Below are positions 6,876 through 7,013 of a DNA stretch of 64,000 bases, piece after piece. The notes beneath the pieces were generated by a model. The model was not told the origin of the DNA, ran no database searches, and was given only the letters and a program-made list of their open reading frames with translations. Made by a program: the position numbers and the translations under genes. Numbering within the stretch: the first letter of the stretch is position 1; each line of letters opens with the position of its first letter. The DNA lies in IMG/VR virus record IMGVR_UViG_3300037010_001227, positions 62,001 through 126,000 of that record, one strand, 5' to 3'.

Positions 6876-7013
6876 ATAAAAAGGGCATCTTTTTGAAGGA
6901 TGCCCAGGGAGAAGAGGAAAATGAAAAGACTCTAGGGCAAAATGAATTTGCTGCGTTTATGGTGACTATTATTAATTGAAAGGAAAGGAAACATAATGTT
7001 ATAACGCCCTAGA
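6876..7013 (-). promoter_or_regulatory. leader-peptide attenuator upstream of tRNA-Asn/Lys
   Basis: 20-aa uORF 6932-6994 (MFPFLSINNSHHKRSKFILP*); terminator GGGCATC/GATGCCC plus U run; TGCCCTAG at the stop can pair with either the terminator 5' arm or upstream TCTAGGGC (7006-7013). Confidence 0.55.

What the first reader, a model, noticed from the sequence alone, without database searches (positions are those of the whole stretch)
6876..7013. Four-segment attenuator before tRNA-Asn whose leader ends in amber
TCTAGGGC (7013-7006) can pair with GCCCTAGA at the leader stop (6938-6931). That segment can instead pair with CTGGGCA, the terminator 5' arm, giving trp-like 1:2 / 2:3 / 3:4 options. The leader has tandem Asn codons upstream of tRNA-Asn. 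Its stop is TAG, and the frame beyond it stays open through the whole terminator. Amber readthrough by the phage CUA tRNA would therefore drive a ribosome across the terminator, a possible feed-forward loop (inference).
Basis: partly seen in the sequence, partly recalled or inferred. Interest (0 to 1): 0.62.

Follow-up and report, generated by a model that had tools for sequence, protein, structure and literature searches.

The report
Asn-codon leader and terminator before phage tRNAs

Summary
Every sequence fact in the finding is correct, all on the minus strand. These are the 8-bp repeat (7013-7006 / 6938-6931), the 20-codon uORF (ATG 6994, AAT AAT 6973-6968, TAG 6934-6932), the terminator (6905-6899 / 6889-6883 plus T-run) and tRNA-Asn 18 nt downstream.

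The element is real and conserved. Three relatives in two diverged lineages (UvsX 87%, 64% and 61% identical) carry the same module in front of tRNA-Asn(GTT). Segments 1 and 2 show two compensatory pair changes. All four terminator stems differ, yet all pair and all have a T-run. Every copy has a 2:3 alternative pairing and a 19-20-codon uORF whose stop lies in or next to segment 2. In-frame AAT AAT is retained in every copy while the rest of the peptide drifts.

The amber feed-forward idea is not supported. One relative stops at TAA, and another has TAG followed directly by TAA. All three frames are open across the pyrimidine-rich terminator, and the genome is not TAG-recoded.

My best reading (confidence about 0.45) is a leader-peptide transcription attenuator gating read-through from the gp32/UvsX operon into the tRNA array. 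Its geometry is non-classical: a ribosome stalled at the Asn codons sits in the 1:2 loop and does not cover segment 1. There is no RNA or experimental evidence.

The parts
8583..9428 (-). gp32-like single-strand DNA binding protein gene, first gene of the upstream operon
   Evidence: Pfam gp32 E 8e-6, PHROG SSB
7312..8502 (-). UvsX/RecA-like recombinase gene
   Evidence: PHROG 97 E 6e-51, Pfam RecA E 5.5e-37. Used to find relatives.
7028..7309 (-). 93-aa conserved small protein gene of unknown function, ending TAA TAG. It is the last gene before the element.
   Evidence: ORF list. Homologues sit beside UvsX in relatives.
7006..7013 (-). Segment 1 (TCTAGGGC), the 5' strand of the anti-antiterminator stem P1. 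It contains the only SD-like purines for the uORF.
   Evidence: Covaries with segment 2 in relatives.
6932..6994 (-). Leader uORF of 20 codons plus TAG
   Evidence: A 19-20-codon uORF ending at segment 2 is present in all four homologous elements, against 2-3.6% of loop shuffles.
6968..6973 (-). Tandem Asn codons AAT AAT (codons 8-9), the putative regulatory codons
   Evidence: In-frame AAT AAT is retained in all four leaders while the other codons diverge. A uORF with tandem Asn arises in 0.1-0.3% of shuffles.
6937..6951 (-). Small inner hairpin P3 (GCAAA / UUUGC). Its 3' strand overlaps the start of segment 2 and the 2:3 pairing.
   Evidence: MFE structures. L003 and L044 have an analogous hairpin at the same place with a different sequence (and inspection).
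6931..6938 (-). Segment 2 (GCCCTAGA). It contains the leader stop TAG 6934-6932 and pairs with segment 1 or, more weakly, with segment 3.
6906..6930 (-). Pyrimidine-rich, G-poor spacer between segment 2 and the terminator. Its first part can extend P1 by pairing with the bases just after the upstream stop codon.
   Evidence: A pyrimidine-rich spacer is present in all four homologues.
6899..6905 (-). Segment 3 (GGGCATC), the 5' arm of the intrinsic terminator
   Evidence: (dG -11.4, z -3.15)
6883..6889 (-). Segment 4 (GATGCCC), the 3' arm of the terminator
6875..6882 (-). T-run of the terminator (TTTTTATT)
   Evidence: T-runs follow the stems in all homologues.
6782..6864 (-). tRNA-Asn(GTT), 83 nt, with extended variable region, G73 and encoded CCA. 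It is the first gene of the minus-strand tRNA array and starts 18 nt after the terminator stem.
   Evidence: ARAGORN, Rfam tRNA 53.6 bits
3156..3229 (-). tRNA with anticodon CUA (amber suppressor type) 3.7 kb downstream in the same array.
   Evidence: ARAGORN, Rfam 68.4 bits

Best explanation
The roughly 150-nt stretch from the stop of the 93-aa gene to the T-run is a ribosome-dependent (leader-peptide) transcription attenuator at the head of the phage's tRNA array. Transcripts come from the gp32/UvsX operon. No promoter is detectable between that operon and tRNA-Asn, and only 18 nt separate the terminator from the tRNA, so tRNA-Asn can be made only by reading through this terminator.

Default state: segment 1 pairs with segment 2, helped by small inner hairpins. 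Segment 3 is then free to pair with segment 4, and transcription stops.

Leader translated smoothly: the ribosome reaches the stop codon, which lies inside or next to segment 2, and covers segment 2. The terminator again forms.

Decoding of AAU AAU is slow because Asn-tRNA(GUU) is scarce: the ribosome stops 20-29 nt upstream of segment 2 and leaves it free to pair with segment 3. The terminator is pre-empted and RNA polymerase runs on into tRNA-Asn and the downstream tRNAs. This would be negative feedback of tRNA supply on tRNA synthesis.

Shown: the four segments, their alternative pairings, the terminator, the uORF and the Asn codons, and their conservation. Inferred: that the uORF is translated, that stalling at AAU AAU shifts 1:2 towards 2:3, and the direction of regulation. 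The identity of the stop codon (amber) plays no special part.
For: 1. Homologous modules sit in front of tRNA-Asn(GTT) in L002 (UvsX 87% identical), L003 (64%) and L044 (61%). The elements are only 54-56% identical between the two lineages.

2. Segments 1:2 keep 7-8 of 8 pairs through two double-sided changes (T-A to A-T, T-A to C-G) and one C-G to T-G change.

3. The four terminator stems all differ (6-9 pairs counted; the scan tool extends them to 7-11), yet every counted position pairs and every stem is followed by a T-run. L003 versus L044 shows a compensatory C-G to T-A change. The scan tool calls the terminators independently.

4. The 2:3 alternative exists in all four. The segment 2-to-3 fold energies are -9.1, -10.4, -13.0 and -12.9 kcal/mol, and the fraction of shuffled segment 2 sequences that pair as well is 0.002-0.045. 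It becomes the MFE of the nascent transcript when segment 1 is masked, and in L003 and L044 even without masking.

5. A 19-20-codon ATG uORF ends in or next to segment 2 in all four. There is an in-frame 3-nt length difference between the window and L002. Most L003/L044 differences are non-synonymous, so the peptide itself is not conserved. In-frame AAT AAT is always present. Loop shuffles give such a uORF in 2-3.6% of cases and one with tandem Asn in 0.1-0.3%.

6. A ribosome at the stop codon masks segment 2. A ribosome at AAU AAU leaves it free, with spacing like that in trp.

7. tRNA-Asn starts 18 nt (window) or 21 nt (L002) after the terminator stem, and no sigma-70-like promoter lies on the sense strand in the element. 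In relative L054 the small gene runs straight into a tRNA after 12 nt. The array is therefore normally read from the upstream operon.

8. AAT is the fifth most used codon of the phage at 4.4%, so Asn-tRNA demand is plausible.
Against: 1. The geometry is not classical. A ribosome stalled at AAU AAU covers neither segment 1 nor segment 2, and constrained folding of the window and L002 still gives 1:2 plus the terminator. How stalling would disfavour 1:2 is unexplained.

2. The 2:3 pairing in the window and L002 is weak (5+2 bp). It could be a by-product of two hairpins that both have G-runs 5' and C-runs 3'.

3. There are only two Asn codons in the window, and NN uORFs arise easily in this AT-rich DNA. 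Several chance examples lie upstream of the same tRNAs.

4. The SD is weak and lies inside segment 1.

5. There are only four sequences in two lineages, related by descent, and no third lineage was found.

6. In L003 an extended -10-like TGTATAAT lies between the terminator and the tRNA. In L044 an HNH gene on the other strand lies between them. The tRNAs may therefore not depend on read-through there.

7. None of the phage's other 13 tRNAs, and none of the 30 tRNAs of a 230-kb relative, has a cognate-codon leader.

8. There is no transcript or ribosome data.
Confidence: 0.45

Rival explanations
1. Plain operon-end terminator plus an upstream structural stem. The hairpin and T-run simply end the gp32/UvsX transcript. 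Stem 1:2 with its inner hairpins is a stabilising or processing structure, for example an RNase target that separates mRNA from tRNA precursors. The 2:3 complementarity and the uORF would be by-products.
For: The terminator is strong and conserved. The 2:3 pairing is weak in the window. The SD is weak. NN uORFs are common by chance here. L003 has a promoter-like TGTATAAT after the terminator and a second terminator after its tRNA cluster. L044 tolerates an HNH gene between terminator and tRNAs.
Against: It does not explain why a 19-20-codon ATG frame ending exactly at segment 2, with in-frame AAT AAT, survives about 45% divergence. It does not explain why segment 2 stays complementary to both segment 1 and segment 3 after both changed. 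In the window and L002, tRNA-Asn begins 18-21 nt after the stem with no promoter, so a fully efficient terminator would silence it.
Confidence: 0.25
2. A real terminator / antiterminator / anti-antiterminator switch that is flipped by something other than Asn-codon stalling. Candidates are a phage or host RNA-binding protein on the conserved segment 1-2 domain, the general state of transcription-translation coupling, or infection-stage factors. The Asn codons would be incidental.
For: All three alternative pairings are conserved. The stalled-ribosome geometry does not fit the classical model. The sequence around segment 2 is identical in the window and L002.
Against: No candidate binding protein or repeated binding motif was found. 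There is no Rfam family match, T-box included. Retention of the uORF and AAT AAT would be unexplained.
Confidence: 0.2
3. The phage tRNA(CUA) suppresses the leader's TAG, the ribosome translates across the terminator and prevents hairpin formation, and so the suppressor tRNA boosts transcription of the tRNA array.
For: In the window and L002 the stop is TAG and the frame is open to a TGA in or at the tRNA. A CUA tRNA is encoded 3.7 kb downstream. Ribosomes close to a terminator can repress it (PMC4824070).
Against: L003 uses TAA, and L044 has TAG directly followed by TAA. All three frames are open over the terminator stem, so the open frame is a composition effect. TAG is forced by the CTAG core of the stem. 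Terminators in the first ~100 bp of a coding region still work, and the stem here lies 89-111 nt from the ATG. The genome is not TAG-recoded, and 30 of 148 long ORFs end in TAG, which argues against efficient suppression.
Confidence: 0.04
4. An independent small gene or small RNA. The region would encode a functional 20-aa peptide, or a terminator-ended sRNA acting in trans, unrelated to the tRNA downstream.
For: It is a compact unit ending in an intrinsic terminator, it is single-copy, and it moves together with the tRNA cluster behind different upstream genes (L044 versus L003).
Against: The peptide sequence is not conserved between lineages, and most L003/L044 changes are non-synonymous. 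No promoter was found. There is no Rfam match. Its position in front of tRNA-Asn is constant.
Confidence: 0.06

Closest known systems
Leader-peptide transcription attenuators of amino-acid operons (trpL, hisL, pheL, thrL, leuL, ilvL of enterobacteria)
   Same: A short uORF with adjacent codons for one amino acid, four segments with 1:2 / 2:3 / 3:4 alternatives, and an intrinsic terminator immediately before the regulated genes. A ribosome at the stop codon masks segment 2, and the spacing from the regulatory codons to segment 2 is similar.
   Different: The target is a tRNA gene array in a phage, not a biosynthetic operon. There are only two conserved regulatory codons. Those codons lie in the loop between segments 1 and 2 instead of inside segment 1. 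Segment 1 lies upstream of the start codon and overlaps the SD-like purines. There is no promoter of its own, so the element is fed by an upstream operon.
pheM-pheST attenuator of E. coli (Phe-codon leader controlling Phe-tRNA synthetase; from established knowledge)
   Same: A component of the translation machinery for one amino acid is controlled by ribosome stalling at that amino acid's codons. This is feedback on decoding capacity rather than on amino-acid synthesis.
   Different: It controls an aminoacyl-tRNA synthetase, not the tRNA itself, and has the classical geometry. I checked the E. coli tRNA-Phe genes pheU and pheV and found no leader or terminator upstream.
T-box riboswitches
   Same: Terminator/antiterminator choice in a leader that reports on the supply of one tRNA species.
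   Different: T-boxes bind uncharged tRNA directly, are 200-300 nt long with Stem I and a specifier loop, and need no translation. No T-box (or any other Rfam family) matches here at E <= 1.
pyrBI / pyrE type attenuators, and ribosome repression of terminators near stop codons (PMC4824070)
   Same: A ribosome translating close behind RNA polymerase can suppress an intrinsic terminator. This is the mechanism the amber read-through idea relies on.
   Different: Here the leader stop lies 25-32 nt before the stem. That is at or beyond the distance where repression fades. Translation across the terminator would need stop-codon suppression, which is not conserved.
Drug-inducible leader-peptide attenuators (ermC, cat, vmlR, msrD type)
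   Same: A leader of about 19 codons with a stall site near codon 9-10, and alternative hairpins downstream.
   Different: Those sense antibiotics bound to the ribosome, and the stall site lies in the first hairpin arm. Many act on translation rather than on transcription termination.

Membership tests
Ribosome-mediated (leader-peptide) transcription attenuator | Intrinsic terminator (G+C-rich hairpin plus U-run) between the leader and the regulated gene | tested here: met
   dG -11.4 kcal/mol, z -3.15. Stems and T-runs are conserved with compensatory changes in three relatives. tRNA-Asn starts 18 nt after the stem.
Ribosome-mediated (leader-peptide) transcription attenuator | Antiterminator: a segment upstream (2) that can pair with the terminator 5' arm (3), mutually exclusive with the terminator | tested here: met
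   Present in all four elements, weak (5+2 bp) in the window and L002, and 8 bp in L003 and L044. It is the MFE of the nascent RNA when segment 1 is masked. Individual significance is modest (fraction of shuffles as good: 0.002-0.045).
Ribosome-mediated (leader-peptide) transcription attenuator | Anti-antiterminator / pause hairpin 1:2 | tested here: met
   8-bp perfect stem with two double-sided compensatory changes between lineages.
Ribosome-mediated (leader-peptide) transcription attenuator | Short translated leader ORF with start codon and ribosome binding site | tested here: inconclusive
   The ATG uORF of 19-20 codons is conserved in frame and length. The SD is weak and lies within segment 1, whereas other genes of the phage have GGAG. 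Translation was not observed.
Ribosome-mediated (leader-peptide) transcription attenuator | Run of codons for the amino acid that relates to the regulated genes | tested here: met
   In-frame AAT AAT in all four leaders before tRNA-Asn(GTT), and up to 5 Asn in 19 codons in L003. The run is short, and NN is not rare in this DNA.
Ribosome-mediated (leader-peptide) transcription attenuator | Regulatory codons placed so that the stalled ribosome masks segment 1 | tested here: not met
   Segment 1 lies 6-13 nt upstream of the ATG and the Asn codons are codons 8-11. A ribosome footprint at AAU AAU leaves segments 1 and 2 both free.
Ribosome-mediated (leader-peptide) transcription attenuator | Leader stop placed so that the terminating ribosome masks segment 2 | tested here: met
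   The stop lies inside segment 2 (window, L002) or directly after it (L003, L044).
Ribosome-mediated (leader-peptide) transcription attenuator | Read-through increases when the cognate charged tRNA is limiting | not testable with these tools
   Uncultured phage. Only DNA metagenome runs hold it.
T-box riboswitch | Match to the T-box covariance model (Stem I, specifier loop, T-box sequence) | tested here: not met
   No Rfam match other than tRNAs in window 1-10000 at E <= 1.
   TAA in L003, and TAG then TAA in L044. All three frames are open across the stem in the window.

The most novel reading that the evidence does not exclude
A phage tRNA array is gated by a leader-peptide attenuator that senses how fast ribosomes decode AAU AAU. 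The phage would then make its own tRNA-Asn (and the tRNAs behind it) only when the host's decoding capacity for that codon is short. This would be the first attenuator found to control a tRNA gene rather than a biosynthetic or synthetase gene. It would also have a new geometry, with the sensing codons inside the loop of the anti-antiterminator.
Probability: 0.4. Interest if true: 0.75.

Novelty: new variant of a known kind. Interest (0 to 1): 0.55.

Why it matters
Phage tRNA genes are usually treated as constitutive cargo that compensates codon usage or replaces tRNAs cut by host defences. How their expression is controlled is largely unknown. A cis-acting sensor that couples transcription of a tRNA array to decoding speed at the matching codon would be a simple homeostatic circuit. 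It would also be a new class of target for leader-peptide attenuation. The element is about 150 nt long and can be tested directly in a reporter or in a purified coupled transcription-translation system. If the rival readings hold, it is an ordinary operon terminator with an upstream stem.

Tried and rejected
- **Near-identical phage records:** none in the GenBank phage collection. A tblastn of UvsX finds only hits below 31% identity.
- **UvsX as a single query in IMG/VR:** nothing.
- **UvsX alignment in IMG/VR:** 17 family loci at 52-60% identity, none with a tRNA next to UvsX.
- **UvsX alignment in GTDB genome contigs:** only distant RecA genes.
- **Alignment of the 93-aa small protein (window 7309-7028) in JGI metagenomes:** nothing. 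Word search gave five new homologues; those with DNA available have another gene immediately downstream and no element, and two had no retrievable DNA.
- **DNA pattern scans for the L003/L044-type element:** only chance hits, L048 and L062, or none.
- **Scan for the tRNA-Asn anticodon arm:** five unrelated phages with no leader.
- **Further relatives:** L054/L055 (UvsX 73%) run straight from the small gene into tRNA-Pro. L045, L046 and L067 have no tRNAs there. The 230-kb relative G001 has 30 tRNAs and no such leader at its tRNA-Asn.
- **AATTAAAT as a promoter motif:** it is conserved after the upstream stop but not enriched in the genome.
- **Sigma-70-like promoter inside the element:** none.
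- **A second copy of the element in the genome:** none.
- **TAG recoding of the genome:** not seen. This was tested with TAG read through and with codon-usage scores on both sides of in-frame TAGs.
- **RNA evidence:** only DNA-type metagenome runs hold the stretch (microbial mat, sediment, wastewater). Contigs of diverged relatives cover the element, but their letters were not listed.
- **My recollection of an attenuator at E. coli tRNA-Phe genes:** checked and rejected. pheV and pheU have only promoters directly upstream.
- **Literature:** searches found no report of leader-peptide attenuation of tRNA genes in the library searched.

Full report
**Setting**

The window is bases 62001-126000 of a 213,189-bp virus record with 14 tRNA genes. 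Relatives encode gp32, UvsX, a T4-type portal, terminase and gp23, so this is an uncultured T4-like jumbo phage. It occurs in microbial-mat and sediment metagenomes; wastewater runs hold only small shares, apparently diverged relatives.

The finding lies on the minus strand. The order of features is:
- a gp32-like gene (9428-8583);
- a UvsX/RecA-like gene (8502-7312);
- a conserved 93-aa gene (7309-7028);
- 163 nt of non-coding sequence;
- tRNA-Asn(GTT) at 6864-6782, the first of ten tRNA genes on that strand.

**The observation**

- TCTAGGGC (7013-7006) and GCCCTAGA (6938-6931) are perfect reverse complements.
- An ATG at 6994 opens a 20-codon frame with AAT AAT at 6973-6968 and TAG at 6934-6932.
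- GGGCATC (6905-6899) and GATGCCC (6889-6883) form a hairpin followed by TTTTT.

RNA folding gives exactly these two domains. The energies are better than dinucleotide shuffles: z -2.4 for the whole, -2.5 for the segment 1-2 domain and -3.2 for the terminator. In the MFE the first domain is a three-way junction. It consists of stem P1 (segment 1:2), a 5-bp P2 and a small hairpin P3 whose 3' strand overlaps the start of segment 2.

The segment 2:3 alternative is real but weak here: UGCCC/GGGCA plus two more pairs beyond a mismatch. The frame after TAG is open to a TGA inside the tRNA. However, all three frames are open across the terminator stem, because the stretch is pyrimidine-rich.

**Relatives**

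UvsX homologues define a family of roughly 220-240-kb phages. Three contigs carry a homologous module in front of tRNA-Asn(GTT).
- L002: UvsX 87% identical, element at 7570-7731.
- L003: UvsX 64% identical, element at 4931-5100.
- L044: UvsX 61% identical, element at 7870-8040.

L047 is a second copy of the window's own sequence.

The elements fall into two lineages, window/L002 and L003/L044. They are 54-56% identical between lineages.

The leaders are:
- window: MFPFLSINNSHHKRSKFILP, stop TAG;
- L002: MFPFLSFHKNNKRSKFILP, stop TAG;
- L003: MNNFFKHNNKHFNGEASPW, stop TAA;
- L044: MNTFSKHNNKHERGGASPW, stop TAG followed immediately by TAA.

**What is conserved**

1. *Stem 1:2.* TCTAGGGC/GCCCTAGA becomes ACCAGGG(T)/GCCCTGGT. 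This involves two double-sided changes and one wobble change, and 7-8 of 8 pairs are kept.

2. *The terminator.* There are four different stems. All pair fully and all are followed by a T-run. L003 versus L044 shows a C-G to T-A compensatory change, and the window versus L002 shows a shortened stem. The scan tool calls the terminators independently in all three relatives.

3. *The 2:3 alternative.*
 - The segment 2-to-3 fold energies are -9.1, -10.4, -13.0 and -12.9 kcal/mol.
 - The terminators are -11.4, -13.1, -18.1 and -16.7 kcal/mol.
 - The segment 1-2 domains are about -14 kcal/mol.
 - In nascent transcripts ending before segment 4, 2:3 is the MFE whenever segment 1 is masked. In L003 and L044 it is the MFE even unmasked.

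4. *The uORF.*
 - It starts 36-39 nt after the upstream stop, has 19-20 codons, and stops in or directly after segment 2.
 - There is an in-frame 3-nt length difference between the window and L002.
 - Most L003/L044 differences are non-synonymous, so the peptide is not what is conserved.
 - In-frame AAT AAT is present in every copy.
 - Dinucleotide shuffles of the 1:2 loop give such a uORF in 2-3.6% of trials and one with tandem Asn in 0.1-0.3%.

The lineages share ancestry, so these figures are not independent probabilities.

**What is not conserved**

The amber stop and the open frame behind it are not conserved. In the window and L002, TAG is part of the CTAG core of the stem. The L003/L044 lineage has TGG at that position and stops one codon later.

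The genome is not TAG-recoded.
- Long ORFs are intact in the standard code.
- Coding density barely rises when TAG is read through.
- Codon-usage scores flanking internal in-frame TAGs give no convincing case.
- 30 of 148 long ORFs end in TAG.

Published measurements show two things. Terminators are repressed only when they lie closer than about 20-30 bp to a stop codon. Terminators within the first ~100 bp of a coding region still function (PMC4824070). Here the stop-to-stem distance is 25-32 nt, and the stem lies 89-111 nt from the ATG. The feed-forward loop through the CUA tRNA is therefore unsupported.

**Why this is probably a regulator and not just a terminator**

In the window and L002 the tRNA begins 18-21 nt after the stem. 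No sigma-70-like promoter is found on the sense strand in or after the element. In relative L054 the small gene runs into a tRNA after 12 nt with no terminator. The tRNA array is thus normally read from the upstream operon, and in this phage tRNA-Asn can only be made by read-through of the terminator.

The logic that fits is negative feedback.
- A ribosome that reaches the stop covers segment 2, and the terminator forms.
- A ribosome held at AAU AAU, 20-29 nt upstream, leaves segment 2 free for segment 3.

AAT is the phage's fifth most frequent codon.

**Weak points**

- The geometry is not that of trp. Segment 1 lies upstream of the ATG and carries the only SD-like purines. A ribosome at the Asn codons covers neither segment 1 nor segment 2, and constrained folds of the window and L002 still prefer 1:2 plus the terminator.
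- In L002 a stalled ribosome would open the inner hairpins P2 and P3. In the window it just misses them (my reading). The effect on 1:2 would have to be steric or kinetic, and that is inference.
- The 2:3 complementarity may partly follow from both hairpins having G-runs 5' and C-runs 3'.
- The SD is weak compared with other genes of this phage.
- NN-containing uORFs occur by chance near these tRNAs.
- L003 has TGTATAAT between the terminator and the tRNA. L044 has an HNH gene there on the other strand.
- No third lineage, no other tRNA with a cognate leader, and no RNA data could be found.

**Comparison with known systems**

No Rfam family other than tRNA matches the region. In working principle the element is closest to the enterobacterial leader-peptide attenuators. 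In logic it is closest to pheM-pheST, where a translation component is controlled by its own codons.

It fails one defining feature of the classical family: the regulatory codons do not lie in segment 1. I therefore file it as a variant that works like, but is not a standard member of, that family.

I found no report of leader-peptide attenuation of a tRNA gene in the library searched. My recollection of such a case at E. coli pheU/pheV proved wrong on inspection of the sequences.

**Verdict**

- Observation: confirmed.
- Interpretation: partly supported. The attenuator architecture and the Asn leader stand. The amber loop does not.
- Best explanation: a leader-peptide attenuator gating the tRNA array, confidence about 0.45.
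- Novelty: a new variant of a known kind.
- Interest: 0.55.

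Noticed in passing
window 6240-6312, minus strand: A second switch-like structure lies inside the tRNA array. A 12-bp hairpin (GCGGGUUCUUGU / ACAAGAACCCGC) has a 3' arm that can instead pair with a downstream GCGGGUU followed by a U-run, giving a terminator-like hairpin with an A-rich loop. Fold z is -3.7. It sits between tRNA-Lys and a tRNA-like sequence.
   Followed up: partly
window 6126-6197, minus strand; also 4836-4917 and 4747-4830: Rfam tRNA matches that ARAGORN does not call. The first scores 31.3 bits, above the gathering score, and has a CUGAAAA anticodon loop (GAA, Phe-like) with an odd T arm. 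The other two score 26 bits, below threshold. They may be degenerate or unusual tRNAs.
   Followed up: no
window 6782-6864; L002 7732-7814; L044 8407-8490: The tRNA-Asn(GUU) of these phages has a 12-13-nt extended variable region (a 3-bp arm in L044), G73 and an encoded CCA. This is unusual for tRNA-Asn. The L003 homologue is a normal 76-nt tRNA. Which synthetase charges it is open.
   Followed up: partly
window 3156-3229, minus strand: The tRNA with anticodon CUA is the best-scoring tRNA in the window (68.4 bits). ARAGORN draws it with a 6-bp anticodon stem, and it has A73. It sits in a genome that shows no TAG recoding and ends about 20% of its long ORFs in TAG. Its role is unexplained.
   Followed up: partly
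window 2148-2236, minus strand: ARAGORN calls a type II tRNA with anticodon ACT (unmodified A34, reading AGU). This is an unusual anticodon.
   Followed up: no
window 30882-34445, plus strand: The ribonucleotide reductase large subunit (1187 aa) has a LAGLIDADG_3 domain inserted in the barrel domain, probably an intein.
   Followed up: no
L002 7765-8304 and L044 8031-8372 (opposite strand): Cys-rich genes resembling HNH homing endonucleases (no family search was run on them) are inserted in the Asn-Lys-His tRNA cluster of relatives. In L002 the gene lies after tRNA-Asn. In L044 it lies between the terminator and tRNA-Asn.
   Followed up: no
window 7018-7025 and homologous places in L002, L003, L044: AATTAAAT directly after or overlapping the upstream stop codon is identical in all four elements, although the upstream gene differs in L044. 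It is not enriched elsewhere in the genome. It may mark the 5' edge of the element.
   Followed up: partly
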